From Macrostomum lignano (lineage: Eukaryota), in assembly GCA_002269645.1 (NCBI GenBank), contig NIVC01002250.1:1-64000 (forward strand): a stretch of DNA of 64,000 nucleotides, read 5' to 3'. Positions 1,990 through 56,702 of the stretch are shown piece after piece. Under the pieces are notes generated by a model. The model ran no database searches and was not told the origin of the DNA. It saw only the letters and a program-made list of their open reading frames with translations. The translations under genes and the position numbers were made by a program. Numbering within the stretch: position 1 is the first letter of the stretch; each line of letters opens with the position of its first letter.

Positions 1990-4460
1990 TGTTGCTCTCC
2001 CTTCTCTCCCTTCTCTCTCCCTTCTCTCTCCATTCTCTCTCTTCTCTCTCCCTTCTCTCTCCCTTCTCTCTCCATTCTCTCCCTTCTCTCTCCCTTCTCT
2101 CCCTTCTCTCCTCCCTTCTCTCCATTCTCTCCCTTCTCTCCTTCTCTCCCTTCTTTCCCTTCTCTCTCTTCTCTCTCCCTTCTCTCTCCCTTCTCTCTCC
2201 CTTCTCTCCCTTCTCTCCTCCCTTCTCTCCATTCTCTCCCTTCTCTCCCTTCTCTCCCTTCTTTCCCTTCTCTCTCTTCTCTCTCCCTTCTCTCTCCCTT
2301 CTCTCTCCCTTCTCTCCCTTCTCTCCTCCCTTCTCTCCATTCTCTCCCTTCTCTCCCTTGTCTCCCTTCTCTAAACAGTTAATTAATTTACTCTCTCCTA
2401 AAACTCTATTGTCTGCCTCCCTTATTTCATTCTTCATCAAAACACGTTTTCTTCAAAAGGTTCAATTGTTACTACTTTTCACTAGTAGCCATTAGCAGCT
2501 ATTTTAATTTTAGCATCACCACCCTAAGCAGCACTTGCATCAAAATCGGCCCGCGCCATCGCAATTTGCGCCCATCCGGCTTCTGCCCATCTCCGTTGCA
2601 TCTGCCCCTGCCTTCCCTCATTTCCCCAGCTGTTGTTTTTTAGCACTTCTTTGCTTCTTTGTATTTGTTTTTGCAATTTATTTTTTTCTCTCGCTGACAA
2701 GGGCCGTCCGCATGCCTGTGTCACTGTTGCGTGACCTGCAGCTGCCACTGCATCCCCTGCTCTGACCAGCGCGTCTTGCCTCCTCTCCCCCCCTCTTCCC
2801 CTTCTCCCTGTCACCTTCCTTTGTCTCTCTCTCTCCCCCCTCTCCTTCTCCTTATCTCCCTCTCCCTCTCTTTATCTCCTTCTCCCTCTCTTTATCTCCC
2901 TCTACATCACACCACTACCCTCATACGTACAAAAGCCAACTGTGCAACTCCTTCCAAACATCTCCCTCTCCTTATCTCCCTCTCCCTCTCCTTATCTCCC
3001 TCTTATCTCTCTCATTCTCTGCACCCTCCCTGACCCGTCCCTGTCTCCTCTGTCCCCTCCTTTCATCTGTCTCCACCTTTCCTACTTCGTAATCTCTTCC
3101 GTGATCGCCCATTTTCTGTCTTCAATTTTTTTCTTCTGTCGGTTCTTCAAATTAAAATCTTCTTTTAGGCCGCCTTCACCACCCAGTGGGAGCTGTCCTG
3201 CTGCTCAATCAATCAGTGCTTGTCTTATTTTGATTTATAAATCTCTGCGATTTTGCCTAAAGGCAAGAGAAAAACCAGCTTCTCGAACGTTCGAAGCTTT
3301 CTTCTGGCTGAAGAAAACACAGAGAATCAGCCCTAGCTCTCCCAGTCCCATGGGGAACCAATGAGGGCCCCGGGGCCGGTTAGCAACTGCAAGAGCTGCT
3401 TTCTCTCTTCTCACCCCCTTCCCCTCTAAATCTCTTATTTTCCCTGCTCCAGTTGAATTTCTTATCAGCCGGGCTCGGGCGGGGCAAGTCGTATTTCTCT
3501 GCCAGTGCCAGCAGTCTGTCTCTGTCTGTGTGGGCTTGGGAAGCCGGCATGCATTGTTCCCGCTGTGCCAGCAGGCTTATTCCTGTTAAACACCGCTGCT
3601 TATGCACACCTGGATAGGCCGACTTATTGCCTGGTGAGTGACCGGTCTGCGATAGTCTGTGGTATAGTAACGAAGCTTAGTATTTGGCCTATGTCAGAGT
3701 GCTGTAGTGCTCTCCTTAGTGTCTCTCCTTGGTGCCTCACCTATTCCCCTCTCTCCGTTCCCCTGATCTCCCTCTCTCCTCATCTGTTCCCCCTGATCTC
3801 CCCTATCCCATCTCTTATTTGTTCCCCCTGATCTCCCCTCTCTCCTCTCATCTGTTTCCCCTGATCTCCACTCTCCCCACATCTGTCCCCCCTGATCTCC
3901 CCTATCCCATCTCTCATCTGTTCCCCCTGATCTCCACTCTCTCCTCATCTGTCCCCCCTGATCTCCCCTATCCCATCTCTCATCTGTTCCCCCTGATCTC
4001 CCCTATCCCATCTCTCATCTGTTCCCCCTGATCTCCCGTATCCCATCTCTCATCTGTTCCCCCTGATCTCCCCTCTCTTCTCTCATCTGTTTCCCCTGAT
4101 CTCCACTCTCTCCTCTCATCTGTTTCCCCTGATCTCCCCTCTCTCCTCTCATCTGTTCCCCTGATCTCCCCTCTCTCCTCTCATCTGTTCCCCCTGATCT
4201 CCCCTCTCTCCTCTCATCTGTTCCCCTGATCTCCCCTATCCCATCTCTCATCTGTCCCCCTGATCTCCCCTCTCTCCTCTCATCTGTTTCCCCTGATCTC
4301 CACTCTCCCCACATCTGTCCCCCCTGATCTCCCCTCTCTCCTCTCATCTGTTTCCCCTGATCTCTACTCTCCCCACATCTGTCCCCCCTGATCTCCCTTC
4401 TCCCATTTCTCATCTGTTCCCCCTGATCTCCCCTCTTTCCTCTTTCATCTGTTCCCAACT
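1990..4460. repeat. Three CT-rich low-complexity/minisatellite tracts (~1990-2370, ~2780-3060, ~3730-4460)
   Basis: CCTTCTCTCC-type and CTCATCTGTTCCCCCTGATCTCCC-type units separated by unique sequence. Confidence 0.85.
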
Positions 4461-4951
4461 AACCTCGCATCTTTTCTCTTCAGATCCTTCCACATCTTTA
4501 TTTTAGCCCTTTGTCTCCCCGCTTCTCTCTTCTCATTTACCTTATTAAAAAGTTTTAAACTTTAGCGTGACCCACATTGTATCCTTACGATTTTGCGCAC
4601 TCGTAGATCTGCTGGTCAGCGCCATCTCCGCTTTCGTTACCCACGTTATTTTTTTGGCAATTCGAACCAACTGTAAATAATTTAGCAGCGACAGCAGTGT
4701 CCATTATAAAGTGTTTTATTGCGATATACTCGCATGCTCTTTTCTTTAGCATATTCTGCTCAAGAAGAAGATGTACTTTACTGTACTGAAGGCAGACTGG
4801 CTAAGTTTATGAGCGGGTCTCGGGCGGGGCTGATTATGCCGTGCCAATCTATCATGCCCGCCGCCAAATTAATTTTTGGCTTGGTGGGGTCTGCCGAGTG
4901 CGGCCGTCTGGGCTGGTCTAGGGATGCCTGGATGTCTGAGGCTATGTCTTA

Positions 4952-5460
<509 letters not shown>

Positions 5461-6129
5461 CCTGTCTCACCAATTAGATCTGTCTGTCTCAATCCATCTA
5501 TTATTTATCCCTCAGCTTAATCCCCACTTCAGCACGGGTGGATAGTATTTGGGAACCCACGAGTGTGACGATTCGTGCGAATATTGCCAGCTCAGGTAAT
5601 AATTGCGTGAAGACTCCCGGGGGGAGGGGCAAGCTAGTTCCTCGCCTCAGGGATTAAGGACAGGCTCGGATTAAGAGTAAAAGACGAATAAAATTGCATG
5701 GGTAGGAGAAGAGACGAGAAATCCGCGCTCCTGTTTCTGAATTAATTGACCCGGCCGCAGCTTCTTCGCTGACCTCTATCGGCAGAGTAGAGACGGGCAA
5801 CGAGTCAGGAAAACCACCTTGCTTAAGGGCGGAGTGAGGGACTGAAAGGCAAAGAAAATGATGTTCGTATCAAAGGTTTTCAATGTGGAAATGTTTAATA
5901 TTGTATTTAAATTTGTCGACAAGATCTGTGCCATTATTAAGGCAATGATTATTAAGGAGAATCCCGCCGCCTGTTTCATCCCTTTAATCTGATTGGCTAG
6001 GCGCTCGTCTACTGCTACGTATATGTATTTCCTATCTATCCCTTATCTCGATTTTAATTGGCTAGACGTTTTTCTACTGCTACGTCTCTGTACTTCCTCT
6101 CTACCTCTTATGTCTATTCTAGTTGGATA

Positions 6130-9320: not shown

Positions 9321-10288
9321 CAACCTACAAGACATCAGTCTGCTCACCGTGCGCGTTTTCAAGACCCAGTCTGAGCGCAAAAAGAAGCACCGTGGCCAGC
9401 AGCAGCCGCAGATTCTGCAACAGCAGCAGCAGCATCGCAAGAACCGCCTAGTTGGCGAGTTGAACATCCCCACTCACGAGATTCTCAGCCCCACGGAGCG
9501 CTGGTTCGATTTGGCGCCGGCGTCATCCTCGGTGTCGTCTAGTGGCAGCGCCGCGTCCTCGGCGCCGGCGGCCATCCGAGTGAAGGCGCGCTACCTCAGC
9601 GTTGACGTCCTGCCGTTGGCCTGGTACTCCGGCCTGCACGACTGCCTGCTGCGCGACCACTGCCTTCTGGCCGCCTGCCTGGAGCCCCGCCTGCACGTCC
9701 GGGTGAAGGAGGACCTGGCCAGCTGCCTGGTGGCGCTGGCGCACCGGCGCGGCCGAGCGCACAGTCTGGTAGCCGATCTGGTGTTGCAGGAGCTCGAACC
9801 CGCGACTGGCCCGGCCGGTGCAATCGCTGGCATAGATTTCCGCGGCAACTCCCTAGCAACTAAGAGTGTTGAGCACTATCTGCGCCTGGTGGGCTCTCGC
9901 TACCTTCGCCAGGTGCTGTCGGAGCCGCTGTCGATGTTGCTACGGTCGGGCGATTGCTGCGAAGTTGACCCGCTGAAGGTGTCCGGCCCTGCCGAGCTGG
10001 CCGCGAACCAGCGCTCCCTTTGCCTGTTCGCCGAGCTGTTCTGGTCCCGGGTGGCCTCCTCGTTGGACCGCCTGCCGTCTGATATTCGCCGCCTGTTTGC
10101 CTACATTCGGCAGCGTCAGCGGCGTCAGCAGATGTGCGACACCTTGGTGAGCGCCGGCTTTTTCCTTCGGTTCGTCTGCCCGGCCATACTCGGCCCATCG
10201 CTGTTCGGCCTGTGCCAGGAGCTGCCCGGGCCCAGGGCTGCCAGGGCGCTGACTCTCATTGCCAAGACTGTGCAGAACCTGGCCAATG
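9321..10288 (+). CDS. RasGAP exon, end of C2 plus catalytic RasGAP domain
   Basis: Contains the arginine-finger motif FRGNSLATK and the signature [15 protein letters not shown]...[13 protein letters not shown]. Donor G|GTGGGT in phase 1 fits the next exon. Confidence 0.92.
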
Positions 10289-10304
10289 GTGGGTTGCCGT
10301 TTTG

Positions 10305-10630
10305 TCTGTCACTCCCAGTGTCTAATTGTTGTCTGTCACTCCAGTGTCTGTTGTCTGTCACTCCAGTGTCTTTGTTGTCTGTCACTCCAGTGTGGTAAGT
10401 GTGTCACTCCAGTGTCTGTTGTCTGTCACTCCAGTGTCTGTTGTCTGTTACTCCAGTGTCTGTTGTCTGTCACTCCAGTGTCTGTTGTCTGTCACTCCAG
10501 TGTCTGTTGTCTGTCACTCCAGTGTCTGTTGTCTGTCACTCCAGTGTGGTAAGTGTGTCACTCCAGTGTCTCCATCTGTCACGCCAACGTCTCCATCTGT
10601 CACTCCAACGTCTCCATCTGTCACTCCAGC
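10305..10630. repeat. ~22-bp minisatellite (GTCTGTTGTCTGTCACTCCAGT)
   Basis: Read directly; lies in intron 10289-10751. Confidence 0.88.
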
Positions 10631-11274: not shown

Positions 11275-12352
11275 ACAGGCCAGAACCAATCGAAAAGCCA
11301 ATAGTCGGCATCAACGCCCTCCACCGCCGACTGAGTCTCTGCCGCCGCCGCCTCCGCTTCCTCCGGCTGCAACAGCAGCCCAGGCCGCCGCGGCGGCGAA
11401 ATGCTCTCCAGCCAGCGTCCAGGAGGACTGGCAGCGGGTGCTGGAAGCCGCCAGAGCCGCGGCCACCACAGCTTCAACAACCGGCAGCAGCGGCTATCAG
11501 AGCTGCCGCACCGCGCCGTCCCCGGTGCAGTTTCTCAATCCCACGTATCAGAAGGCCGGCTCCGGCCACCTGCCCACCCTGCAGTCCCGCCCATCCTCGG
11601 CCAGCAGCGAAGCCGCCGCCGCTGCCGCCGCTGATATTGAAACAGCTGAAGGCGCCTACGATATCGAGGCCGACGATGAAGTCGGCATTGACGATAACGA
11701 GGCTGCTGAGGAGGACGAGGAGGAAGTGCCGGTCGCCGCTTCGCCGTCGCCCCGCTGCTCGCCGCTGCCTGCCGATGACGTCGGCGAGGAGGTCGGCGAC
11801 TGCTCCGACGAATTGATCGACGAGCAGCGGGACCGTCAGCTGGCTGTCGAGGTGGCCGCGGCCGCCGCTGCCTACCAGCGCCAGCAGCAGGCGTCGGCTA
11901 CGTCGACTTCGACGTCAACAAAAGCGTCGGCCGCGTCGACAGCCTCGGCGACGTCCTCGACTGCTGCCGGACAGCAGCAGCAGCAGCAGCCGCGAGTTCG
12001 AATGGGCGTCAGCTCCGTGTCCGCCTACCGGGAGCGGAAGCAGCAACAGCAACTGCAGCAGCAGCCTCCGCCATCCGATGACTACGAATCCGAGCTCTCG
12101 CAGCTGCACCTGGAGCTGCTGCACACCAGGCAGAGGCTGGAGGCTACCGAGGCTCGCCTAAGACTTAACGAGCAGGAGAAACTGCAGCTCATCGCCGATG
12201 CCAGACAGCGGGTTGGCGAGAGTCAAGCCGCCGCCGCCGCCTCCGCTGACCCGATAGACAGCCAACTGCAGCATCAGCAGCAGCTGCAGGCCATCCTTGA
12301 CCGGTTGAACAGCCTGGAGTGCGACGTCCGCAATGGTCAGCAGGAGTGCTGA
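10752..12352 (+). CDS. RasGAP probable last coding exon: end of GAP domain, Q/P/A/S-rich region and C-terminal coiled coil
   Basis: CGCAG acceptor in phase 1 gives QNLANGAPFGGKEAYMSFMNRFL (family NLANF..F..KE.YM.FMN.F). Coiled coil YESELSQLHLELLHTRQRLEATEARL. In-frame TGA at 12350-12352, although a donor near 12336 cannot be excluded. Confidence 0.85.
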
Positions 12353-12529: not shown

Positions 12530-13060
12530 AACCGACGGGATATCCCCTCAATGACCGATTAAATTCCCACTTAATAATTAATTAAACTTCCCCTCAAAAA
12601 TTAATGGGATTTCCTTCCATAGTCAGTGGGATTTCCTTCAAAATCGATTGGATTTTACCTTAAAAACCGATGGGATTTCCCTCAATAACCGATGGGATTT
12701 CCCTCAATACCCGATGGGATTTCCCTCAATACCCGATGGTATTTCCCTCAATACCCGATGGGATTTCCCTCAATAACCGATGGTATTTCCCTCAATACCC
12801 GATGGGATTTCCCTCAATAACCGATGGGATTTCCCTCAATACCCGATGGTATTTCCCTCAATACCCGATGGGATTTCCCTCAATAACCGATGGGATTTCC
12901 CTCAATACCCGATGGTATTTCCCTCAATACCCGATGGGATTTCCCTCAATAACCGATGGTCCCTTAGTAACCGATGGGATTTCCCTTAGTAACCGATGGG
13001 ATTTCCCTCAATAACCGATAGGATTTCCCTCAATAACGGATGGTATTATTCACGAAAAGG
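12530..13060. repeat. 22-bp minisatellite (CCGATGGGATTTCCCTCAATAA)
   Basis: Read directly. Confidence 0.9.
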
Positions 13061-13624
13061 CTCGCGCACGCAATCCTGGCATTATTCAAACCAAATTCAA
13101 GCCAGCTCGGCCTAGTCCATTATTTCTATGTTTTGTTTTTTAAAAGCGTAGGCATTTTCCTAGGATTGAAACTAATATTAATTAGAATGCTTTATTGTGT
13201 GTCTGTCGCATCACTGTTGCGCCCAGCATATGCCACTGGAGAGGCATAGAGTTTATTTATATCTCTGTCTATGCTTAGTTCAGCTGCGTGAGACTGACTG
13301 CATTATTGTATATCGCTATTTTTCATTTCCAACACGTTTATGCCATGCGGTGTGCAATTCTAATGCATCTCTCGCCCCCCCCCCCTGTCACTCAATGCAG
13401 CAAACTGCCTTATAAGACTATTTACATGTATTGCCTGTCCATCTCTCTCTCGGTTGCTTGTGATAAGCTTCTAATTTTATTAGTTTGGTTTTTTGTTTGT
13501 TTGTTGTGTCTGAAGCTGGATTCTACCTGTGCTTGTGTTTGAGCATCTTAGCTCTTATCGAATATTAGATCGTTATTTTGAAATGCAGAGATCTCATTTC
13601 CAGGGCTTGAGATCTCCCGGGGGT

Positions 13625-19848: not shown

Positions 19849-20040
19849 ATCGCTTCTCGGCCTTATTGGCTAAGATCAAAGTGTAGTTTCTGTTCTTTAG
19901 AGATTAATTCCTCTAACGTAGGCCATTGGTCTACTAAGTAATTAATCCGGTTTTTGATGAGTCGGCCCAGTGCTTCGTGTTCACACGACCTGGTCCACGC
20001 GTAGGCCTTGCGCTGCAGTACAGCAAGGATCTGCGCATCT
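19849..20040 (+). ncRNA. U2: U2 spliceosomal snRNA gene (full length, divergent variant)
   Basis: Begins ATCGCTTCTCGGCCTTATTGGCTAAGATCAAAGTGTAGT. Stem IIa TTAGAG/CTCTAA, stem IIb GTAGGCC/GGTCTAC, stem IIc complement AATTAAT (19940-19946), Sm-like GGTTTTTGA, stems III and IV with a CTGCAGTA loop. The 3' end is approximate. Confidence 0.93.
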
Positions 20041-20389
20041 AATAAATTTAAAATAATTAAGGTCGGACATACAAAGCCATTCATTGAATCAAGGCCAGTA
20101 AATTTGAAGCTTTGCGGAAAGTCGTATTAAAGTTTGAAACTGCACTAGGTCAGTCAGCAAGTCATTCATACAGCTAGCTAGAGAAAGTCAGTTTCTTGCT
20201 CTCGAATTGAGTCTTAGTTATATGGATGGACAATGGCAATTGACAATGTATAGCTTGCTTTTGACCGGGAGAACCTACAATGCATGCATATAAAATCAGA
20301 CACTTTAAACTGCTATTTGATTGCATTTATAGTGAGTATAGTCCGAGAGGTATCAACACTCATGCTTGTTAAACGTCTCTTGAGAATTA

Positions 20390-21461
20390 GAGGGTGAGAC
20401 AGGGGGTGACAGGGATGAGACAGTGGGTGACAGGTGTGAAACAGTGAGTGACAGGGTGAGACAGTGGGTGACAGGTGTGAGACAGTGGGTGACAGGTGTG
20501 AGACAGTGGGTGACAGGGTGAGACAGTGAGTGTCAGGGTGAGACAGTGGGTGTCAGGGTGAGACAGTGGGTGTCAGGGTGAGACAGTGGGTGAGACAGTG
20601 GGTGACAGGGTGAGACAGTGGGTGACAGGTGTGATACAGTGAATGACAGGGAGAGACAGTGAGTGACAGGGTGAGACAGTGGGTGACAGGTGTGATACAG
20701 TGAATGACAGGGTGAGACAGTGAGTGACAGGGAGAGACAGTGAGTGACAGGGTGAGACAGTGAGTGACAGGGTGAGACAGTGAGTGTCAGGGTGAGACAG
20801 TGGGTGACAGGTGTGATACAGTGAGTGACAGGGTGAGACAGTGGGTGACAGGTGTGATACAGTGGGTGACAGGGTGAGACAGTGGGTGACAGGGATGAGA
20901 CAGTGGGTGACAGGGTGAGACAGTGGGTGACAGGGATGAGACAGTGGGTGACAGGGTGAGACAGTGGGTGATAGGGTGAGACAGTGGGTGACAGGGTGAG
21001 ACAGTGGGTGACAGGGATGAGACAGTGGGTGACAGGGTGAGACAGTGGGTGACAGGGATGAGACAGTGAGTGACAGGTGTGATACAGTGGGTGACAGGGT
21101 GAGACAGTGGGTGACAGGGATGAGACAGTGGGTGACAGGGTGAGACAGTGGGTGACAGGGTGAGACAGTGGGTGATAGGGCGAGACAGTGGGTGACAGGG
21201 TGAGACAGTGGGTGACAGGGATGAGACAGTGGGTGACAGGGTGAGACAGTGGGTGACAGGGTGAGACAGGGTGAGACAGTGGGTGACAGGGTGAGACAGT
21301 GGGTGACAGGGTGAGACAGTGGGTGACAGGGTGAGACAGTGAGTGACAGGGTGAGACAGTGGGTGACAGGGTGAGACAGTGGGTGACAGGGTGAGACAGT
21401 GGGTGACAGGATGAGACAGTGGGTGACAGGGTGAGACAGTGGGTGACAGGATGAGACAGTG
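20390..21461. repeat. 20-bp minisatellite (GGGTGACAGGGTGAGACAGT), copy 1
   Basis: Read directly; ends at the retrotransposon 5' junction. Confidence 0.95.
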
Positions 21462-23734
21462 AAACGTCACTGCGGTGTACACCGGCCCTGATCAGGCGAC
21501 TGCCGACATCCCCGTCGAGAGCGGTGTCCGGCAAGGGTGCCCGCTGTCCGGAGTGCTGTTCGCCCTCTGCATGGAGCCGCTACTGCGTGCGCCAAACCAG
21601 GCTGACGGCTACAACCTCCTGGGGCACAGCAGGCAACTCAGCCTCGCCTACGCCGACGACGCTGCGCTCTTAGCCAACAGCGGCGAGGCCCTGCAGCGCA
21701 CGGTGACAGCGATCGACCGCGCCGCAGCCTGGGCCGGCCTAGAGATCAACCCCGACAAGTGTGGCCGCCTCACCATCAACGGCGGGCCCGGGGAGGACTT
21801 CCAGCTGCGCGTACAGGCAGGCGCGATCCGGGCGCTCGCAGAGGACGAATTCTACGAGTACCTGGGCGTGCCGGCCGGCGAACGCCGCTCTGCATCCGTG
21901 GCGGCGCTGCTGGAACGCGCGCTCAACGATCTGACGGCCGTGGCGAACAGCGACCTGCTACCGTGGCAGAAGCTCGACGCCTACAACACCTTCATTGCGT
22001 CGCGCCTGCCATTCCACCTCCGCCTGCGCGACGCCGACTGGACGAAGCTCGGCAACCCAAGGCGCAAACTGCAAGGGCATCAGAGAGCGGAGCTGGGCTA
22101 CGACGAGCGCGCACGTCAAATCCTCCGCCGCATCGTCTACCTTCCGACGCAGTCCTCGACAGACTACCTCTACGCCGACAGATGCCACGGCGGCCTTGGC
22201 CTGTCCCTAGCGAAGGAGGAAGCAGCCGTCCAAAAGGTCACCGAGGCCGTCAGGCGACTCTGCTGCACAGACGCCGCGCTCAGAGAGCTAGCCTGGGCCG
22301 AACTGCGCGGCCTGGTCCAACGCCGCCTACGGCTCCGCGCTGCACCTGTCAGACCTCGCGACGTCGCCGATTTCCTCAATGGCGCAGCACTCCCACCCAG
22401 CGGAGAAACGGCCAGCTGGTGGTTCCAAGTCCGCCACGCCACCCGCGAAGTGCTCCATGCGACCGGGCTGCGCTTCACCATCAGCTACGACTGGACGGCC
22501 AGCCTGGAGTGGCGCGACCCGCTGTCCGGAAACATCCAGCGATGCGACAGAGCGGCAGCAATAACCCGGAGGCTTCACCAGGCGGTCAGGGCAGCGCACA
22601 CGGCGGCCTGGCGCGGGTGCCACTCCCAAGGCCGATTCGCCACGACCGCCACGCACATCGGCAGCCACACCTGGCTGTTCAGCAGCACCGGCATGCGCGC
22701 CTGCGACTGGCGCTTCATCCACCGAGCGCGGCTCAACCTGGTGCCCACCAACGCGCTCCGGAGACTGGCCGACCCGACATCCGACCCGCGATGCCGCCGC
22801 TGCGGAGCCGGCGTCGAGACGCTCGGCCACGTGATCAACAGCTGCCCGGTGCACGCGGCCAGGTGGAGGGACCGCCACGACGGCATCGTCAACGCCGTCG
22901 CCACCGCCATCAGCGAGGCCCGCCCAAACGCGACCATCACCACCGACCAGGAGGTCCTTCCCGGCTCTGATCTGCGACCTGACATCAGCATCATGGATCC
23001 AGACAGAGGCCGCCGTCTCCTGATCGAAGTCAAGTCGCCGTTCGAGGTCAGGCCGGCCACGTTCCCACGCAAGCACCGAGCCGTATGCCAGAAGTACGCC
23101 GGCATCACGCAGCAGCTCAGCGCAGAGGCGCCAACGGCCCTGGCCACTTTCTGCATCGGCTCGCTGGGCGCCTGGTCGCCTTTCAACAACGCCATCCTGC
23201 GCGCTGCAGGCCTGCGCGAGCGCGACATCCGGCACCTCCAACGACGACTGGCGCTGCACTGCATCCACTGGAGCCGCAACACGTGGGTGGAGCACTGCAC
23301 CGGCGCACCTCAAATCCACTGATTTTGTGCCGAACTCTGCCAAACTCTGCTCATCTCAGCCCACCCTGTTACCTTTACTTTTACCTGTTTTATTTATCTT
23401 CCACTCTGCATTTTGTTTTACTTTGTTTTTCTTTAATATTTTACTTTTTACTGTCTCGAAGTTCATGCACTCTGTAAGCATTTTTCGCTGTGATTCCGCC
23501 TCTCGCGCCCATCCCCGCCGCCACCCCGTCTCCTGCGCCTTCACTTTTTCCCACTGTTTTAATTGCATTTACTTCAATGTTTTACTGTTTTACGCATCCT
23601 GCGAACCCGTTTTTAGCTACTTTCAGTAGCATCATCGGCTCTTGGCCAAATATTTCCGCTCATATCGCATCGTTTAAATACTTAAATATATTGCCCGACC
23701 GTCGGATACTCGGCCGACGGGCAGGGCCTTTCGC
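21462..23734 (+). mobile_element. 5'-truncated RLE-type non-LTR retrotransposon of the U2-targeting Utopia (NeSL-related) type
   Basis: Uninterrupted ORF with the RT C-terminal half, CCHC knuckle, RHD and PD-(D/E)xK endonuclease, then a ~410-nt T-rich 3' UTR that joins directly to TCTGTTCTT of U2, the known Utopia target site. Confidence 0.9.
21463..23322 (+). CDS. Utopia-like ORF remnant: partial reverse transcriptase, zinc knuckle and restriction-like endonuclease
   Basis: GVRQGCPLS, LAYADD, YEYLG, CRRCGAGVETLGHVINSC, WRDRHDGIV, RPDISI...LIEVKSP. No internal stops and no N-terminus. Confidence 0.9.
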   Translation, partial: NVTAVYTGPDQATADIPVESGVRQGCPLSGVLFALCMEPLLRAPNQADGYNLLGHSRQLSLAYADDAALLANSGEALQRTVTAIDRAAAWAGLEINPDKCGRLTINGGPGEDFQLRVQAGAIRALAEDEFYEYLGVPAGERRSASVAALLERALNDLTAVANSDLLPWQKLDAYNTFIASRLPFHLRLRDADWTKLGNPRRKLQGHQRAELGYDERARQILRRIVYLPTQSSTDYLYADRCHGGLGLSLAKEEAAVQKVTEAVRRLCCTDAALRELAWAELRGLVQRRLRLRAAPVRPRDVADFLNGAALPPSGETASWWFQVRHATREVLHATGLRFTISYDWTASLEWRDPLSGNIQRCDRAAAITRRLHQAVRAAHTAAWRGCHSQGRFATTATHIGSHTWLFSSTGMRACDWRFIHRARLNLVPTNALRRLADPTSDPRCRRCGAGVETLGHVINSCPVHAARWRDRHDGIVNAVATAISEARPNATITTDQEVLPGSDLRPDISIMDPDRGRRLLIEVKSPFEVRPATFPRKHRAVCQKYAGITQQLSAEAPTALATFCIGSLGAWSPFNNAILRAAGLRERDIRHLQRRLALHCIHWSRNTWVEHCTGAPQIH

Positions 23735-23886
23735 TCTGTTCTTTAGAGATTAATTCCTCTAACGTAGGCCATTGGTCTACTAAGTAATTAATCCGGTTTT
23801 TGATGAGTCGGGCCAGTGCTTCGTGTTCACACGACCTGGTCCACGCGTAGGCCTTGCGCTGCAATACAGCAAGGATCTGCGCATCT
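23735..23886 (+). pseudogene. U2 snRNA 3' fragment lacking the first ~40 nt and promoter, immediately downstream of the retrotransposon
   Basis: Colinear with 19889-20040 (offset 3846), with two substitutions within the RNA portion. Confidence 0.9.
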
Positions 23887-24235
23887 AATAAATTTAAAAT
23901 AATGAAGGTCGGACATACAAAGCCTTTCATTGAATCAAGGCCAGTAAATTTGAAGCTTTGCGGAAAGTCGTATTAAAGTTTGAAACTGCACTAGGTCAGT
24001 CAGCTAGTCATTCATACAGCTAGCTAGAGAAAGTCAGTTTCTTGCTCTCGAATTGAGTCTTAGTTATATGGATGGACAATGGCAATTGACAATGTATAGC
24101 TTGCTTTTGACCGGGAGAACCTACAATGCATGCATATAAAATCAGACACTTTAAACTGCTATTTGATTGCATTTATAGTGAGTATAGTCCGAGAGGTATC
24201 AACACTCATGCTTGTTAAACGTCTCTTGAGAATGA

Positions 24236-26292
24236 GAGGGTGAGACAGTGGGTGACAGGGTGAGACAGTGAGTGACAGGGGTGAGACAGTGAGTGACAGG
24301 GGTGAGACAGTGAGTGACAGGGTGAGACAGTGGGTGACAGGTGTGAGACAGTGGGTGACAGGTGTGAGACAGTGGGTGACAGGGTGAGACAGTGAGTGTC
24401 AGGGTGAGACAGTGGGTGTCAGGGTGAGACAGTGGGTGTCAGGGTGAGACAGTGGGTGAGACAGTGGGTGACAGGGTGAGACAGTGGGTGACAGGTGTGA
24501 TACAGTGAGTGACAGGGTGAGACAGTGAGTGACAGGGTGAGACAGTGAGTGACAGGGAGAGACAGTGAGTGACAGGGTGAGACAGTGAGTGACAGGGTGA
24601 GACAGTGAGTGACAGGGTGAGACAGTGGGTGACAGGTGTGATACAGTGAGTGACAGGGTGAGACAGTGAGTGACAGGGTGAGACAGTGAGTGACAGGGAG
24701 AGACAGTGAGTGACAGGGTGAGACAGTGAGTGACAGGGTGAGACAGTGAGTGACAGGGTGAGACAGTGGGTGACAGGGTGAGACAGTGAGTGACAGGGAG
24801 AGACAGTGAGTGACAGGGTGAGACAGTGAGTGACAGGGTGAGACAGTGGGTGACAGGTGTGATACAGTGAGTGACAGGTGTGATACAGTGAGTGACAGGG
24901 TGAGACAGTGGGTGACAGGTGTGATACAGTGAGTGACAGGGTGAGACAGTGGGTGACAGGTGTGATACAGTGAGTGACAGGGTGAGACAGTGGGTGACAG
25001 GTGTGATACAGTGGGTGACAGAGTGAGACAGTGGGTGACAGGGTGAGACAGTGGGTGACAGGGTGAGACAGTGGGTGACAGGGTGAGACAGTGAGTGACA
25101 GGGTGAGACAGTGGGTGACAGGGTGAGACAGTGGGTGACAGGTGTGATACAGTGAGTGACAGGGTGAGACAGTGGGTGACAGGGTGATACAGTGAGTGAC
25201 AGGGTGAGACAGTGGGTGACAGGGTGAGACAGTGAGTGACAGGGTGAGACAGTGGGTGACAGGGTGAGACAGTGGGTGACAGGTGTGATACAGTGAGTGA
25301 CAGGGTGAGACAGTGGGTGACAGGGTGAGACAGTGGGTGACAGGGTGAGACAGTGGGTGACAGGTGTGATACAGTGAGTGACAGGGTGAGACAGTGGGTG
25401 ACAGGGTGAGACAGTGGGTGACAGGTGTGATACAGTGAGTGACAGGGTGAGACAGTGGGTGACAGGGTGAGACAGTGGGTGACAGGGTGATACAGTGAGT
25501 GACAGGGTGAGACAGTGGGTGACAGGGTGAGACAGTGAGTGACAGGGTGAGACAGTGGGTGACAGGGTGAGACAGTGGGTGACAGGTGTGATACAGTGAG
25601 TGACAGGGTGAGACAGTGGGTGACAGGGTGAGACAGTGGGTGACAGGGTGAGACAGTGGGTGACAGGTGTGAGACAGTGGGTGACAGGGTGAGACAGTGA
25701 GTGTCAGGGTGAGACAGTGGGTGACAGGGTGAGACAGTGGGTGACAGGTGTGAGACAGTGGGTGACAGGGTGAGACAGTGGGTGACAGGTGTGATACAGT
25801 GAGTGACAGGGTGAGACAGTGGGTGACAGGTGTGATACAGTGAGTGACAGGGTGAGACAGTGGGTGACAGGTGTGATACAGTGAGTGACAGGGTGAGACA
25901 GTGGGTGACAGGTGTGATACAGTGGGTGACAGAGTGAGACAGTGGGTGACAGGGTGAGACAGTGGGTGACAGGGTGAGACAGTGGGTGACAGGGTGAGAC
26001 AGTGGGTGACAGGTGTGATACAGTGAGTGACAGGGTGAGACAGTGGGTGACAGGTGTGATACAGTGAGTGACAGGGTGAGACAGTGGGTGACAGGTGTGA
26101 TACAGTGGGTGACAGGGTGAGACAGTGGGTGACAGGGTGAGACAGTGGGTGACAGGGTGAGACAGTGGGTGACAGGGTGAGACAGTGGGTGACAGGGTGA
26201 GACAGTGGGTGACAGGTGTGATACAGTGAGTGACAGGGTGAGACAGTGGGTGACAGGTGTGATACAGTGGGTGACAGGGTGAGACAGTGGGT
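24236..26292. repeat. 20-bp minisatellite (GGGTGACAGGGTGAGACAGT), copy 2
   Basis: Same unit, and shares the diagnostic run of three TGTC-variant units plus a half unit with copy 1. Confidence 0.95.
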
Positions 26293-27051
26293 GGCTAACC
26301 ACAATGGCTCGACAGCAGTATAAAGCTTTCAATGGCATCAATCAATCAGCCTTCTCTTCCTTTCTGCATATTTTGCTACAACAAATATTCACCTCATCAG
26401 CGCTGCGGTCTCCTGGGCCCCCGCGGCCGCCGCCGACTCTCAATGCACGCAGGTCCTCGCTTAATTTGTATGGAAATTCAAATTGGGCCGTGGGACCCCG
26501 CGGGGCCACAGGTCAGCAGCCCCGGCAGCCGCTGACCCCTTGACCCCTGCGACTTCTCAAGCGGGATCTCTGGTGGGGACTCAGCATCCCGGGGTCGGTT
26601 CGTGCGTGTTTTTTCTTCCAACAGTGAAATTCAATTTTCAGGGGCGGGAGCAAAGGGAAGGAGAGTGCTTTTGAAGATTCCCCGCTTCCCTTCTCTGGCT
26701 GATCCCATGGGAGGAGTTCATTCGAGCCAGCGCTGCGGGTTGGGAAAAGCGAAAGTTGGGCTAAAAATGATTTAACAGCAACGAGAGGAGGCTGGCTCTG
26801 CATCGATACAGTAGCGATTGAGGTGGAGGAGAATTGTGTAACTACTCCAGTTCTTAGGGAGAAATATCCCCAAGAGACAAGTTTCCCGCATTAAGTGAGT
26901 GAAGGGGAAAGAATTGGAAACGAAAAATTTGCTTAGGAATTGAAAACATTCCTGCGAGAGCTTCAACTGAGAGTGGATGCCTTCGCAAATGGATTCGTCA
27001 GGGGCGCTTGGGGTGGCCGATCTAGCGATTTGATAGATAGCTCTGAGGCAT

Positions 27052-27535
<484 letters not shown>

Positions 27536-28277: not shown

Positions 28278-30527
28278 CTAGGGCAGAACCGGCCTGCAGA
28301 CTCTGCGCCCGTCGCCAAGGCAGTTGAAGGCGTCGGCGAATCCCGGGAGTCGCGCCAGCAGGCGGCCGACCCGGTCAGGCAGCGGCCCCGCCCGGCCCCA
28401 CCGGTGCCCCGGCACCGCCTTCTGGCAGTACAGCTGGCTGACCGACACGAAGAATTCCCGCCTGGCTGCTGGAGATGCCGGTGATGTCGGAGATGTCATT
28501 CTCAGCGCCGCGGCGGCCGCGGTAAACTCGACGAAGTCTCGACGGACGGCTGCCGTCTCGGCGTCCAGACAGTCGGCAGCTGAGCGGTTGAGCGCGGCTG
28601 GCGGCGCCTGGGCGACGGCCCGGCTGGCCAGCTCGTAGGCCAGCAGGAAGTCGAGCTGGCGCGGCCGCGGCAGCAGCGCCGGCAAGTAGAAGGCCAGCGG
28701 ATACGGGAACCGGCGCCCCTGGTCGTCGAGGGCGTCGCGGAAGAATCGCGGCGGCAAAGGCGGCGCCGGCGTCGGCAGCGGCGGAGCTGCGGAGGCGGCG
28801 TGAAAGGCGAGGCGGTGGGCGGACAGGCGGCGGTGGCGCAGGGCATCCAGCAGGCCGGGCAGGAAGGCCGCATCGGCTGGCAGGCGGAGGTCGCCGTACT
28901 GGTTCAGCAGCCGCTCCTCGCCACCGAGGCCGCCGAAGTCAGTCGGCAGTCCCAGGACGGGAACTTTGGGACGGCCTGCCAGGCGAGGGTCGCCGCCGGT
29001 CTCCGCCAGCAGCGCCGCCCTGGCCGCCTCTGTCCGGTCGGCGGCAAGCCGCAGCGGCCCGGCCCCGGGGCTGAGGTGTCTGGCAGCGAAGGTCGCTAGC
29101 AAAGCGTCGGGGAACAGGCGGTGCAGACTGCGCAGGCACCGCTCCGGCCTGTCGCCATCAGCGAACCTGTCGGGATGCTCGCCAGCCGGCGCCACCTCCG
29201 TCGGCAGAGCGTCGCGCAGCTCGTGGAAGTGCGGCCTGAGCGCCACCAGCGAGTTGACGAACGCGTAGCCAACCAGCGTGTCCGGGTCCTGCCGGGACGC
29301 CAAGTCGAAGAGACGCCGCAGCCGGTCGGGCTGCCTGGCGCAGACCCGGCTGTACTTGCCCTCCGCCCAGGCTGGCAGGATGAGGCTGCGGAAGCTGGCC
29401 CAGCCGGTGGCGCCGTTCGGGAACAAGCCGGCAAGACCGGCGGCGTCCAGCAGATGGTCCTCCGGGGCGGCCCGGCTCTCGCCGTCTAGCAGCTGATGCA
29501 GCGCCACGTGGTAGGCGGCCATCTTCTCCACAATGAGGTAGGGGACCCCGCGCTTGGCCAAGCGGAAGGCCGCCTCGACCAGGCGGACCAGGCGGTCCCG
29601 GCCGACACCCGCCAGGCCGCGGGGTGGCGCCGGCGTCAGGCACAACGGCAGCGAGTCAGCCGGAATCGCTGACCCCGGCACGGGCGATACCAGATCCACC
29701 CCGGCTGGCAAGTCGTGCACCAGGAACTGAGCGAGGACCCGCTCCGGGGAGTGCTCGAAGCCCCAGACCACCGACTCGGCGCCGAACACTGACATGGGGG
29801 TGAAGCGGGTCGGGTCGGAGAAGGCGGAGACCAGCTGGGTGGCGGTGAGGCCGGCCGAGGAGGCGCAGGCGCGCGTCAGGTTGGCCAGCGCCGCCTGCCA
29901 GGCCGGGCGCTGCCCCGGCGCCGGTGTCAGCAGCGTCTCCAGCAGCAAGTCCCTCAGGCGGAGCTGCAGCTGCCTGATGGCGCTGGTCTCTCGCTCGACG
30001 CCCCGCCCGGTCCAGCGCAGGCTGACGGCGGCGTTGAATCTGCCGCAGGCGGCGGCGTAGAGGCCCCCGTCGGGGTCGCAGACGCCAGCCGCTGTCGACG
30101 TTGGGTCGGCGAAATCGGCCGCGTCGCCGCTCGCCGACGCCTGCCGCCAGCCGTCGGACGGCGCGGCCAGCAGCATCGACGAGGACGCGGCAGGGGAGAA
30201 TCGCCGCCTGGCGCTGCCGCCGCGGCCGCAGTCGCCGGAGTTGGCGCCGAAGGCTGTCAGGGCGGTGCGGCCGTCCAAGAAGAAATAGAACAGGCAGAGT
30301 ACGGCGAACCCGGCGGCCAGGAGAGTCAGCAGGCCGGCCAGCACGCAGGTGGTGGCGCGGCAGCGGCCGCCCTGAAGTCGCCGACCGCAGCAGCCGGTGG
30401 ATTTGGTCGCAGCCTCAGCATCCGAAGCCGCAGATGACGAGGCGGCGGAGTTGGCAGCGGCGGCTCCAGACGAGGCGGCGGGGATCAGAGATTCGTCCTT
30501 GCCAGCTGTACCGTTGGACGTTGTCAT
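28278..30527 (-). CDS. Neprilysin/ECE (peptidase M13)-like type II membrane protein, probably catalytically inactive; ORF stays open upstream to 30821
   Basis: TM helix CVLAGLLTLLAAGFAVLCLFYFFL, CDPDGGLYAAACGRF (compare PCEDFYQYACGGW), LAFYLP (compare NAFYSP), C-terminal RVGRLLARLPGFADAFNC. HEXXH is replaced by YELAS. The start codon is uncertain (30527 or 30821). Confidence 0.8.
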   Translation of the reverse strand: MTTSNGTAGKDESLIPAASSGAAAANSAASSSAASDAEAATKSTGCCGRRLQGGRCRATTCVLAGLLTLLAAGFAVLCLFYFFLDGRTALTAFGANSGDCGRGGSARRRFSPAASSSMLLAAPSDGWRQASASGDAADFADPTSTAAGVCDPDGGLYAAACGRFNAAVSLRWTGRGVERETSAIRQLQLRLRDLLLETLLTPAPGQRPAWQAALANLTRACASSAGLTATQLVSAFSDPTRFTPMSVFGAESVVWGFEHSPERVLAQFLVHDLPAGVDLVSPVPGSAIPADSLPLCLTPAPPRGLAGVGRDRLVRLVEAAFRLAKRGVPYLIVEKMAAYHVALHQLLDGESRAAPEDHLLDAAGLAGLFPNGATGWASFRSLILPAWAEGKYSRVCARQPDRLRRLFDLASRQDPDTLVGYAFVNSLVALRPHFHELRDALPTEVAPAGEHPDRFADGDRPERCLRSLHRLFPDALLATFAARHLSPGAGPLRLAADRTEAARAALLAETGGDPRLAGRPKVPVLGLPTDFGGLGGEERLLNQYGDLRLPADAAFLPGLLDALRHRRLSAHRLAFHAASAAPPLPTPAPPLPPRFFRDALDDQGRRFPYPLAFYLPALLPRPRQLDFLLAYELASRAVAQAPPAALNRSAADCLDAETAAVRRDFVEFTAAAAALRMTSPTSPASPAARREFFVSVSQLYCQKAVPGHRWGRAGPLPDRVGRLLARLPGFADAFNCLGDGRRVCRPVLP

Positions 30528-30864
30528 GGTAACGGTGAAGCCAACGGACGCTTCCGAGCGTTTTCTGGCGTGTTTTTGAATCTTTTCTGCAAAAGAAAGT
30601 AGCGGGCGCCGAAAGCAGAAGACTTGCTTTGAAGTGGGAAGGGTAGCTATTGCTGCTTCTAGAGGAAGGCTTGGTTGAGTTTTTATGCAGGGGAATTCAG
30701 TGGCGGAAGGGCAGAGCTGATTGGACTGGGGAATCGCATGGGGTCGGCTGGATTGGCCGAGGTGGTCACGAGTATTAGGCCGGGGAGACCCAGAGCCAGG
30801 GTCTGGAGCGGCATGGGTCATGTTTCCTGGAAAATGTCTCTAAATTAACGCTAAATAAACAGAA

Positions 30865-39584: not shown

Positions 39585-40100
<516 letters not shown>

Positions 40101-42368: not shown

Positions 42369-43587
<1,219 letters not shown>

Positions 43588-44369
43588 CCCGGAGGCAATA
43601 AATCTCGCAGTCAGATAATTAGCAGGTGATTCAGTCCCACAGACCAGCAATGCAGATAATTAGGCAAGCCAAGTGTTGATTTCTGACTATTCTAAAGAAG
43701 CAGAAACGCATCTGTCTGGGCCGGTCCTTGTCCCCCCCCCTGGTTGGCCATAGCGGAGCCTCGCCAACTGTTGCATCACAGGCTCCGCCATCCAGTCTAG
43801 GAGGAATAATCCAGAGAGTGTGGGAGACAGAAAGTCAGTTGTAAAAAATGCCATTTCTTGTTGCTAAGTCGATCGGGGCTTCCTTTTTTCTCTCGCTTCC
43901 CCAGCTTCAAGCAGGGCGCGGCGACCTCAGCTTGTTAAGCTACAGGCCTGGGCAAAGCTCCGAATTTCGTGGGAAAAGACGCGGGAAGAAAGAAAAGTTT
44001 CAAAGTCTGCTGCTTCAAGCTGGCCAAGAAATGGAATTAAAAGCAGAGAAGCAAAGAGTAATCGGTTATTCCACCTGCCGGTCAGCTGCTGACGGGGTCA
44101 GTTGGTGCATTACCGGCACCGGATTATCGAGTGGAAACTCGAAAGCACAGAGCAAGGTTCAAATGGCGGTTTGGGATTCTTTGAATCCGAAGCAGGGCAT
44201 GCTGGAATGGCTCTCCGGCTGCATGGGTGGCCAGCTTCTTGCCCAAGGACCGCTACAGGTCTGGACGGACAAGGGCTGCGTTTCTTCGAATAATTACATT
44301 TAAAGGCTCGCGTTTGCAGCAAAAATGCGCTAAAATACACTTGTTTTCTGCTAACTTCAAGGCTAAAGC

Positions 44370-50100: not shown

Positions 50101-51185
50101 ACTCTGTCCCACACTGCTGCACAAGTATGTAACACTCTGTCCCACACTGCTGCACAAGTATGTAACACACTATCCCACACTGCTACTCCAGTATGGTAAC
50201 ACTCTATCCCACACTGCTGCACAAGTATGTAACACTCTGTCCCACACTGCTGCACAAGTATGTAACACTCTATCCCACACTGCTACACCAGTATGGTAAC
50301 ACTCTATCCCACACTGCTGCACAAGTATGTAACACTCTATCCCACACTGCTGCACAAGTATGGTAACACTCTGTCCCACACTGCTGCACAAGTATGTAAC
50401 ACTCTGTCCCACACTGCTGCACAAGTATGTAACACTCTATCCCACACTGCTACACCAGTATGGTAACACTCTATCCCACACTGCTGCACAAGTATGTAAC
50501 ACTCTATCCCACACTGCTGCACAAGTATGTAACACTCTATCCCACACTGCTGCACAAGTATGTAACACTCTGTCCCACACTGCTGCACAAGTATGTAACA
50601 CTCTATCCCACACTGCTGCACAAGTATGTAACACTCTGTCCCACACTGCTGCACAAGTATGTAACACTCTATCCCACACTGCTGCACAAGTATGTAACAC
50701 TCTGTCCCACACTGCTGCACAAGTATGTAACACTCTATCCCACACTGCTGCACAAGTATGTAACACTCTGTCCCACACTGCTGCACAAGTATGTAACACT
50801 CTATCCCACACTGCTACACCAGTATGGTAACACTCTATCCCACACTGCTGCACAAGTATGTAACACTCTATCCCACACTGCTGCACAAGTATGTAACACT
50901 CTATCCCACACTGCTGCACAAGTATGTAACACTCTGTCCCACACTGCTGCACAAGTATGTAACACTCTATCCCACACTGCTGCACAAGTATGTAACACTC
51001 TGTCCCACACTGCTGCACAAGTATGTAACACTCTATCCCACACTGCTGCACAAGTATGTAACACTCTGTCCCACACTGCTGCACAAGTATGTAACACTCT
51101 ATCCCACACTGCTGCACAAGTATGTAACACTCTGTCCCACACTGCTGCACAAGTATGTAACACTCTATCCCACACTGCTGCACCA
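47115..51185. repeat. 33/34-bp satellite (GTATGTAACACTCTGTCCCACACTGCTGCACAA) with higher-order blocks
   Basis: About 4 kb; 11-aa repeats in the ORF track. Confidence 0.96.
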
Positions 51186-56650: not shown

Positions 56651-56702
56651 GATTGCTCACCACGAGCGTTATGGTAAAAAATATCCAAAACAGTAAACTC
56701 AC

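What the first reader, a model, noticed from the sequence alone, without database searches (positions are those of the whole stretch)
19849..26292. U2-targeting retrotransposon insertion that leaves an intact U2 gene through a kb-scale target duplication
Seen: the order is intact U2, 350-bp flank, 20-bp minisatellite, 5'-truncated RLE element, U2 from TCTGTT onward, the same flank, the same minisatellite, then unique DNA. The element's 5' end joins the minisatellite instead of the U2 5' end and promoter. Established: in target-primed reverse transcription the 3' junction is precise and the 5' junction defines the target-site duplication. Inference: the nascent cDNA was joined ~1.57 kb downstream (a giant TSD, or template invasion of a sister/homologous copy inside the minisatellite), so the host kept a functional U2. 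The alternative is a deletion in a tandem U2 array. The ~6 substitutions between copies favour an older or inter-allelic event.
Basis: partly seen in the sequence, partly recalled or inferred. Interest (0 to 1): 0.75.

Follow-up and report, generated by a model that had tools for sequence, protein, structure and literature searches.

The report
Truncated U2-targeting retrotransposon with duplicated target
A broken copy of a known U2-gene-targeting jumping gene (Utopia type) in a Macrostomum flatworm genome sits between two copies of 1.6 kb of its own target, so a complete U2 gene survives upstream; this probably came from one insertion with a very long target duplication, but a pre-existing tandem U2 pair cannot be ruled out.

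Summary
The order is: a complete U2 gene (19849-20043), a 347-bp flank, a 1,071-bp array of a 20-bp minisatellite, a 2,273-bp 5'-truncated retrotransposon (21462-23734), then U2 from TCTGTT onward, the same flank (6 substitutions in 502 bp) and a 2,061-bp array of the same minisatellite.

The element is a restriction-like-endonuclease (RLE) non-LTR retrotransposon of the already described Utopia kind. It is inserted at the canonical U2 nt 38/39 site. The host is Macrostomum lignano or a close relative.

It would be a 1,573-bp TSD, with the top-strand break downstream in the minisatellite. There is direct experimental precedent: R2 proteins that fail to nick the second strand give target duplications of about 1 kb, and LINE-1 gives 1-10 kb "large TSDs".

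The window alone cannot exclude a pre-existing two-copy tandem U2 duplication with a deletion at the 5' join. That is how Kojima and Jurka (2015) read the same "intact U2 upstream" pattern in Phytophthora.

Whether the retained U2 is functional is unproven: its branch-site box reads GUAGUU, not GUAGUA.

Verdict: a real feature, a new member of a known kind, with a moderately interesting but unproven mechanism.

The parts
19849..20043 (+). Complete U2 snRNA gene copy (195 nt). The branch-site box reads GUAGUU, and there are two 1-nt insertions relative to the Rfam consensus.
   Evidence: Rfam RF00004, 140.6 bits, model 1-192; sequence read.
19889..21461 (+). Left copy of the duplicated target segment (1,573 bp): U2 nt 41-195, the 3' flank and a partial minisatellite array. 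This is the putative giant TSD.
   Evidence: Gap-free match of 19889-20390 to 23735-24236 with 6 mismatches. The variant-repeat maps of the arrays are collinear.
20044..20390 (+). Left copy of the unique 3' flank of U2 (347 bp, 37% GC).
20391..21461 (+). Left minisatellite array (20-bp unit AGGGTGAGACAGTGGGTGAC, about 54 copies). It ends abruptly at the element's 5' end.
   Evidence: TRF; unit map.
21462..23734 (+). 5'-truncated Utopia-type RLE non-LTR retrotransposon (2,273 bp). No poly(A) tail; the 3' end abuts U2 at the canonical site.
21463..23322 (+). Remaining open reading frame (619 codons, 68% GC). It holds RT motifs from GVRQGCPLS onward with YADD (aa 63-66), a CCHC zinc knuckle (aa 444-461) and RLE residues D507/E522/K544. 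About 345 N-terminal residues are missing.
   Evidence: Pfam RVT_1, profile positions 111-203 only. Aligns to residues 350-956 of the 960-aa relative P0006. Conserved columns; residue positions; best PDB matches are R2 proteins.
23323..23734 (+). 3' UTR of the element (412 bp, 44% GC). The terminal hairpin is not significant.
23735..23889 (+). Disrupted U2 copy: nt 41-195 only (Rfam model position 39 onward), starting TCTGTTCTT.
   Evidence: Rfam alignment. Same site as Utopia and Keno (PMC4640811).
23890..24232 (+). Right copy of the 3' flank.
24233..26293 (+). Right minisatellite array, full length (about 102 copies). Its last ~65 half-units have no counterpart in the left array.
   Evidence: TRF; unit maps and alignment.

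Best explanation
A Utopia-type RLE retrotransposon nicked the bottom strand of a single U2 gene at its usual site, between local nt 40 and 41 (canonical 38/39). It then began target-primed reverse transcription. The cDNA stopped or was cut inside the RT coding region.

The element's endonuclease did not make the normal nearby top-strand cut. Instead, the truncated cDNA end was joined by homology-independent repair to a top-strand break 1,573 bp downstream, inside a G-rich 20-bp minisatellite. Fill-in of the two long single-stranded stretches duplicated U2 nt 41-195, the 347-bp flank and about half of the minisatellite.

The result is a structurally complete U2 gene upstream of the dead element and a 5'-decapitated U2 downstream. 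The two copies then diverged: 1.2% in unique DNA and much more in the arrays.

Shown: the anatomy, the element family, the insertion site and the exact boundaries of the duplication. Inferred: that there was one event, where the second break fell, and the repair route. A join to a broken sister chromatid or homologue inside the minisatellite would give the same product and is included here.
For: 1. The right copy of the duplication begins exactly at the Utopia nick site and the left copy ends exactly at the element's 5' end. There is no U2 nt 1-40 stub or promoter DNA at the junction.
2. The left array is a collinear, shorter version of the right array, sharing a run of rare variant units.
3. 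There is no sign of a U2 array: only these two U2 signals in 64 kb, and no homology between DNA upstream of the left U2 and DNA downstream of the right array.
4. Full-length relatives leave a U2 5' part upstream of the element, with a 20-bp TSD in L003 and U2 sequence running a few nt past the nick site in L005. In both, U2 sequence runs past the nick site, so the 5' join, and presumably the top-strand cut, lies on the downstream (duplication) side.
5. [quoted passage not shown] Truncated cDNAs are joined without homology (PMC13486585).
6. L1 gives TSDs over 100 bp and 1-10 kb tandem duplications regarded as large TSDs (PMC5223499; bioRxiv 10.1101/2024.12.14.628481).
7. One event explains everything; the main rival needs two.
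Against: - No empty site, allele or paralogous locus was available, so a single-copy pre-insertion state is assumed, not shown.
- Kojima and Jurka saw intact U2 genes upstream of Utopia copies in genuine Phytophthora U2 arrays and read them as deletions on integration.
- In L1 data, deletions at the insertion site are commoner than duplications.
- Kb-scale TSDs for R2 were seen with engineered nick-deficient proteins in human cells, not in nature.
- Variant units of the left array (GGATGAGACAG x7, GATGAGACAG x2, including the units next to the junction) are absent from the right array. Substantial array turnover after the event must therefore be assumed.
Confidence: 0.5

Rival explanations
1. 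Pre-existing tandem pair plus deletion. The locus already carried two tandem units (promoter-U2-flank-minisatellite). The element inserted into the downstream U2. The 5' join, or a later deletion, removed everything from the middle of the upstream minisatellite through the second promoter and U2 nt 1-40 into the element's 5' part.
For: - It explains every boundary equally well.
- U2 genes are tandemly arrayed in Phytophthora, about 0.87 kb apart in one P. infestans contig. There, intact U2 genes upstream of Utopia copies were interpreted as deletion on integration (PMC4640811).
- Upstream deletions of 1-10 kb are the commonest L1-associated local change.
- L010 shows a U2-inserted relative with no U2 5' part on the same strand within 10 kb upstream.
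Against: - It needs two independent events.
- No third unit or any other U2 occurs in 64 kb.
- No repeat is present that could have mediated the first duplication, and no trace of a second promoter copy remains.
Confidence: 0.3
2. RNA-mediated duplication. One of the two flank copies was reverse-transcribed from a read-through transcript.

(a) An element RNA from an allelic or paralogous canonical insertion read through into U2 nt 41-195, the flank and the minisatellite. It was primed by minisatellite homology at a nick in the array of an intact locus.

(b) Alternatively, the RT jumped from a truncated element RNA onto the 3' end of a U2 read-through transcript and copied it back to the U2 5' part.
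For: - Both routes give exactly the observed order.
- The 1.2% divergence could be allelic or homeologous at the time of the event; M. lignano assemblies hold 180 Mb of blocks at 95% identity or more (PMC5730564).
- From my own knowledge of the R2 literature: R2-type RTs use templates carrying downstream target sequence and can jump between templates.
Against: - Route (a) needs a first-strand nick at a non-target site.
- Route (b) needs a rare 1.5-kb U2 read-through RNA ending in the array.
- There is no direct evidence for either, and nothing in the sequence distinguishes them from the giant TSD.
Confidence: 0.08
3. Assembly artefact. An empty haplotype and a filled haplotype (or a homeologue) of a highly repetitive, partly duplicated genome were joined head to tail.
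For: - The copies differ by about 1%, like haplotypes.
- The host genome is repeat-rich and redundantly assembled.
- The window is packed with minisatellites.
Against: - The minisatellite/RT junction has no homology that could cause a false overlap. It must exist in reads unless a read is chimeric.
- There is no gap of Ns.
- The two arrays have distinct internal structures.
Confidence: 0.05

Closest known systems
Utopia: U2 snRNA gene-targeting RLE non-LTR retrotransposons of the NeSL clade (Kojima and Jurka 2015, PMC4640811)
   Same: - Same insertion site: the 3' flank starts TCTGTTCT at U2 nt 39.
- Same single-ORF plan: RT, then a CCHC knuckle, then a PD..(D/E)xK endonuclease.
- No poly(A) tail in this copy.
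- An intact U2, rather than a nt 1-38 stub, lies upstream, as reported for Phytophthora.
- Homologues include an element from Ladona fulva, a species listed as carrying Utopia.
   Different: - The host is a macrostomid flatworm, which is not in the 2015 host list.
- The best homologues are at most 38% identical.
- This locus preserves a long unique 3' flank and a minisatellite on both sides of the element, so the duplication can be seen. The Phytophthora arrays could not be resolved in this way.
R2 insertions made by second-strand-nicking-deficient R2 protein in human cells (Aderounmu et al. 2026, PMC13486585)
   Same: An RLE element with a precise 3' junction at the first-strand nick. The 5' junction is displaced about 1 kb downstream, giving a kb-scale target-site duplication that uses spontaneous sense-strand breaks.
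   Different: That system is engineered, targets 28S rDNA and uses transgene templates. Here the event is natural and old, lies in a U2 gene, and the duplication restores a complete copy of the small target gene.
R9 of bdelloid rotifers (126-bp TSD; Gladyshev and Arkhipova 2009, as cited)
   Same: An RLE site-specific element with an unusually long target duplication.
   Different: R9's 126 bp is a fixed property of every insertion. Here the duplication is 1,573 bp and apparently a one-off event at a truncated copy.
LINE-1 insertions with large TSDs or 1-10 kb tandem duplications (PMC5223499; bioRxiv 10.1101/2024.12.14.628481)
   Same: The second break lies far from the first nick, which produces a kb-scale direct duplication flanking the insertion.
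   Different: L1 uses an APE-type endonuclease, is poly(A)-tailed and is not site-specific. No target gene is regenerated.
Keno (APE-type U2-targeting non-LTR retrotransposon)
   Same: Identical insertion site in U2.
   Different: Keno has an apurinic-like endonuclease and no C-terminal RLE. The window element has the CCHC plus RLE module, so it is not Keno.

Membership tests
Utopia (NeSL-clade RLE retrotransposons) | The 3' end of the element abuts U2 exactly at nt 38/39, so the flank begins TCTGTTCT. | tested here: met
   ...CCTTTCGC|TCTGTTCTTTAGAG at 23734|23735. The Rfam alignment places 23735 at model position 39. The site definition is from PMC4640811.
Utopia (NeSL-clade RLE retrotransposons) | A single ORF with RT followed by a zinc knuckle and a PD..(D/E)xK restriction-like endonuclease. 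| tested here: met
   Pfam RVT_1 (3.7e-15) and a weak zf-RVT match. CCHC at aa 444-461 and D507/E522/K544 fall in invariant or nearly invariant columns of a 17-sequence alignment. The best PDB matches are R2 proteins.
Utopia (NeSL-clade RLE retrotransposons) | One to three N-terminal zinc fingers upstream of RT. | not testable with these tools
   This copy lacks about 345 N-terminal residues. No full-length copy from the same genome could be retrieved.
Utopia (NeSL-clade RLE retrotransposons) | Phylogenetic placement of the RT within the Utopia/NeSL lineage. | tested here: inconclusive
   Homologues at 30-38% identity include elements flanked by U2 at the same site (L003, L004, L005, L007, L010) and a Ladona fulva element. 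The two closest target 5S rRNA instead. No Repbase reference sequences were available and no tree was built.
Keno (APE-type U2-targeting) | An apurinic/apyrimidinic-like endonuclease and no RLE. | tested here: not met
   A C-terminal CCHC plus RLE module is present.
R2 | Insertion into 28S rDNA. | tested here: not met
   The target is U2. R2 proteins match mainly in the RT/linker region, at E = 2.9e-23 or weaker.
TPRT insertion with a giant target-site duplication | A direct repeat of target DNA that starts at the first-strand nick on the 3' side and ends at the element's 5' end on the 5' side. | tested here: met
   19889-21461 against 23735 onward. The unique part is gap-free with 6 mismatches in 502 bp, and the arrays are collinear.
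TPRT insertion with a giant target-site duplication | The pre-insertion (empty) site carries the duplicated segment only once. | not testable with these tools
   No other sequence from this genome is in the reachable collections. The metagenome pattern scan gave 0 hits, and no protein above 38% identity was found.

The most novel reading that the evidence does not exclude
Kb-scale target duplications may be a recurrent and selectively favoured outcome of Utopia insertion. Whenever the top strand breaks more than about 155 bp downstream, the insertion rebuilds a complete U2 gene, and a fresh target, upstream of the element.

This would explain three things reported in 2015: why Phytophthora shows intact U2 genes rather than nt 1-38 stubs upstream of Utopia copies, why decapitated U2 copies outnumber intact ones, and how a parasite of a low-copy essential gene persists. 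In this reading, U2/Utopia arrays would be built by the element itself.
Probability: 0.15. Interest if true: 0.8.

Novelty: new member of a known kind. Interest (0 to 1): 0.5.

Why it matters
Utopia elements parasitise a low-copy, essential gene. How they persist was left as an open puzzle in 2015 (PMC4640811, section 11).

If this locus is a single-event 1.6-kb TSD, it shows two things. First, the large "downstream-join" duplications just described for engineered R2 systems also occur in nature. Second, for a 195-nt target they regenerate the gene instead of destroying it. That would turn a lethal-looking insertion into a neutral gene duplication and could seed U2 arrays.

It is also relevant to RLE-based gene-insertion tools, where such duplications are an unwanted by-product.

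If the locus was instead a tandem pair with a deletion, this is an ordinary dead Utopia copy in a new host.

Tried and rejected
- **Other loci of the same genome.** The protein search with the element ORF found nothing above 38% identity. An exact-pattern scan of metagenome contigs for the species-specific U2 core gave 0 hits. No empty-site or genome-wide test was therefore possible.
- **Cross-species recurrence test.** Ten loci of relatives were fetched through the look-up of encoding contigs and 80 through the search for related loci. Five relatives are U2-flanked. None shows an intact U2 plus a duplicated flank upstream, and most contigs are too short. The 80 metagenome loci had no detectable U2.
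- **Homologous unequal crossing-over between a filled and an empty allele.** Rejected. It would leave U2 nt 1-40 between the minisatellite and the element, and the junction is direct.
- **Tandem-array signature** (promoter DNA repeated downstream of the right array). Not found.
- **Substitution spectrum between the copies** (5 transversions, 1 transition). Too few sites to mean anything.
- **3'-terminal hairpin of the element.** Not better than shuffled sequence (z = -1.35).
- **Apparent U2-like 5' stem in the second Rfam hit (23709-23734).** This is element sequence that the model stretched over; it is not a U2 5' end.
- **Phytophthora supplement S3.** It gives U2 sequences only, with no flanks, so the TSD idea could not be tested there.
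Full report

Yes, at the stated coordinates.

- Rfam finds one complete U2 snRNA gene at 19849-20043 (140.6 bits, model 1-192).
- It finds a second hit at 23709-23889 (81.7 bits). The alignment shows true U2 homology there only from 23735 (UCUGUUCUU, model position 39). The 26 nt before it are the 3' end of the inserted element.
- From 19889 to 20390 the sequence matches 23735-24236 without gaps. There are exactly six substitutions in 502 bp: two in U2, three in the unique flank and one at the first minisatellite units.
- Both copies run into arrays of the same 20-bp unit: 20391-21461 (1,071 bp) and 24233-26293 (2,061 bp).
- I cut the arrays into about 10-bp half-units. Both contain the same run of rare variants near the 5' end (ABFBFBAHAIAIAJBABD). 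The left array aligns collinearly with about the first 140 of the 205 half-units of the right array, and the last ~65 have no counterpart.
- So the arrays are copies of one another, and the left one is the shorter, cut-off version.

**2. What lies between the copies?**

- 21462-23734 (2,273 bp) carries one open frame (21463-23322, 68% GC against 37% in the flanks) and a 412-bp 3' UTR without a poly(A) tail.
- Pfam sees only the C-terminal half of RVT_1 (profile positions 111-203).
- The frame aligns to residues 350-956 of a 960-residue full-length relative, and homology starts four codons from the junction.
- It keeps the YADD motif, a CCHC knuckle (aa 444-461) and the endonuclease residues D507/E522/K544. 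These fall in invariant or near-invariant columns of a 17-sequence alignment.
- The nearest solved structures are R2 proteins.
- It is therefore a 5'-truncated, dead-on-arrival RLE non-LTR retrotransposon.
- Its 5' end abuts the minisatellite directly (...GATGAGACAGTG|AAACGTCACTGCGG), with no U2 nt 1-40 and no promoter DNA in between.

**3. Family and host**

The 3' junction (|TCTGTTCT at U2 position 39) is the defining site of Utopia, the U2-targeting RLE lineage of the NeSL clade. It is shared with the unrelated APE-type Keno (PMC4640811).

Protein homologues are distant, at most 38% identity. I fetched their loci:
- L004, L007 and L010 end exactly at |TCTGTTCT of U2.
- L003 is full length with U2 on both sides and a 20-bp TSD.
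- L005 shows a 5' junction after U2 nt ~43.
- The Ladona fulva homologue comes from a species listed as carrying Utopia.

So this is a Utopia-type element in a new host.

An 847-codon ORF at 28278-30821 (minus strand) is 96% identical to a Macrostomum lignano UniRef protein. The minisatellite-packed window also fits that genome, in which 15% is tandem or simple repeats. The host is M. lignano or a very close relative, or a paralogous copy.

**4. How did the structure arise?**

The geometry is what target-primed reverse transcription predicts if the bottom strand is nicked at the normal site and the top strand breaks 1,573 bp downstream. The stretch between the two breaks ends up on both sides of the insert. 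A whole U2 is then rebuilt upstream and a decapitated U2 is left downstream.

Three things make this more than a formal possibility:
- In full-length relatives, U2 sequence upstream of the element runs past the nick site, giving a 20-bp TSD in L003. The 5' join, and presumably the top-strand cut, is therefore on the downstream side.
- Truncated cDNAs cannot anneal to the upstream target and are joined by homology-independent repair. [quoted passage not shown]
- LINE-1 shows the same class of event: TSDs over 100 bp, and 1-10 kb tandem duplications "regarded as large TSDs".

A G-rich minisatellite is a plausible place for such a break, but that is inference only.

**5. Why this is not settled**

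A pre-existing pair of tandem units (promoter-U2-flank-minisatellite) would leave the identical sequence. This requires an insertion into the second U2 and a deletion reaching back into the first array.

Kojima and Jurka saw intact U2 genes upstream of Utopia copies in real Phytophthora U2 arrays. They favoured deletion on integration, while admitting they could not resolve it. Their supplementary table gives no flanks, so I could not re-test it.

Against the rival here:
- It needs two events.
- There is no third unit or other U2 in 64 kb.
- No repeat is present that could have mediated the first duplication.

For it: upstream deletions are common outcomes of TPRT, and L010 lacks any same-strand U2 5' part upstream.

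RNA-mediated variants (a read-through element RNA primed in the array, or a template jump onto a U2 read-through RNA) give the same product but need rarer steps. Homologous exchange between filled and empty alleles is excluded by the direct junction. Misassembly is unlikely because nothing at the junction could cause a false overlap.

My weights are: giant TSD about 0.5, tandem pair plus deletion about 0.3, RNA-mediated about 0.08, artefact about 0.05.

**6. Is the retained U2 functional?**

Unknown.
- It is complete and scores well.
- Its branch-site box is GUAGUU rather than the near-invariant GUAGUA. The changed base (19888) is the one immediately 5' of the insertion site.
- At 19966 it has a C-U mismatch in a stem, where the decapitated copy has a G-U pair.
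- Whether the change at 19888 is species-typical, a repair scar at the nick or a target-immunity variant cannot be told from one locus.

**7. Novelty and interest**

These points are all known:
- the element family;
- its site;
- the "intact U2 upstream" pattern;
- kb-scale TSDs (L1, and engineered R2 since 2026).

What is new is the host. If the single-event reading holds, this would also be a natural RLE example in which the long TSD regenerates the small target gene. That bears on the 2015 puzzle of how Utopia survives in about ten U2 copies.

The decisive test is an empty or paralogous site in the same genome. That genome is known to hold 180 Mb of blocks at 95% identity or more, so the test is simple for anyone with the assembly.

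Noticed in passing
window 19883-19888: The complete U2 copy has GUAGUU instead of the near-universal branch-site-binding GUAGUA. The changed base is the one immediately 5' of the Utopia nick site. It could be species-typical, a repair scar or a cleavage-resistant target.
   Followed up: partly
L001 4355-4440 and L002 4029-4115: The two closest protein relatives of the window element (38% and 35% identity, from JGI and TARA metagenome contigs) end exactly at position 77/78 of a 5S rRNA gene (...aaaa|CTTGGATGGGTGACCGCC). This looks like a 5S-rDNA-targeting RLE sister lineage of Utopia. I did not check whether it has been described.
   Followed up: partly
L008 ~12070-12330 and L009 ~12970-13330: Two other relatives end in pentanucleotide microsatellites, (ATTGT)n and (TAGTG)n. 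The latter resembles the GTGTAGTA part of the U2 target. Target specificity in this clade appears to have shifted repeatedly.
   Followed up: no
L005 2095-3130 and L006 13182-14794: 5S rRNA genes lie about 1 kb from the U2 gene or Utopia-like insertion in two unrelated hosts (an unidentified ENA contig and the dragonfly Ladona fulva). This suggests linked 5S/U2 clusters as landing zones.
   Followed up: no
L010 901-1546 (minus strand): A U1 gene lies next to a U2 5' fragment (nt 1-26) that is followed by an ORF with a faint zf-CCHC match. An APE-type RT gene (2340-5822) is close by on the same strand. This may be a second, different snRNA-gene-targeting element in the same snRNA cluster as the Utopia-like copy.
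   Followed up: no
window 1-64000: The window holds about 25-30 different minisatellite arrays (units of 9-69 bp, up to 4 kb, for example 47119-51183, 44369-46685, 54382-56659 and 61709-64000). It also holds (GACA/CTGT)n tracts at 4953-5458, 27053-27535 and 39585-40100, with mixed (ATAG)n/(AGAC)n runs at 42369-43587. Strand composition skews are strong.
   Followed up: no
window 28278-30821 (minus strand): An 847-codon intronless, 68% GC ORF with a weak Peptidase_M13_N match. It is 96% identical to M. lignano UniRef A0A1I8I7E6, which is annotated there as a DUF667 protein of 981 aa. That is probably a fused gene model.
   Followed up: partly
window 9349-10398: An ORF with a RasGAP domain (Pfam 3.8e-26), probably an exon of a host gene. 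It runs into a 22-bp minisatellite at 10302-10571.
   Followed up: no
window 23709-23734: Rfam stretches the U2 model over the last 26 nt of the element (CUCGGCCGACGGGCAGGGCCUUUCGC), which loosely resembles the U2 5' stem-loop. This is probably chance. Automated annotation would call this decapitated copy a full U2 gene.
   Followed up: partly
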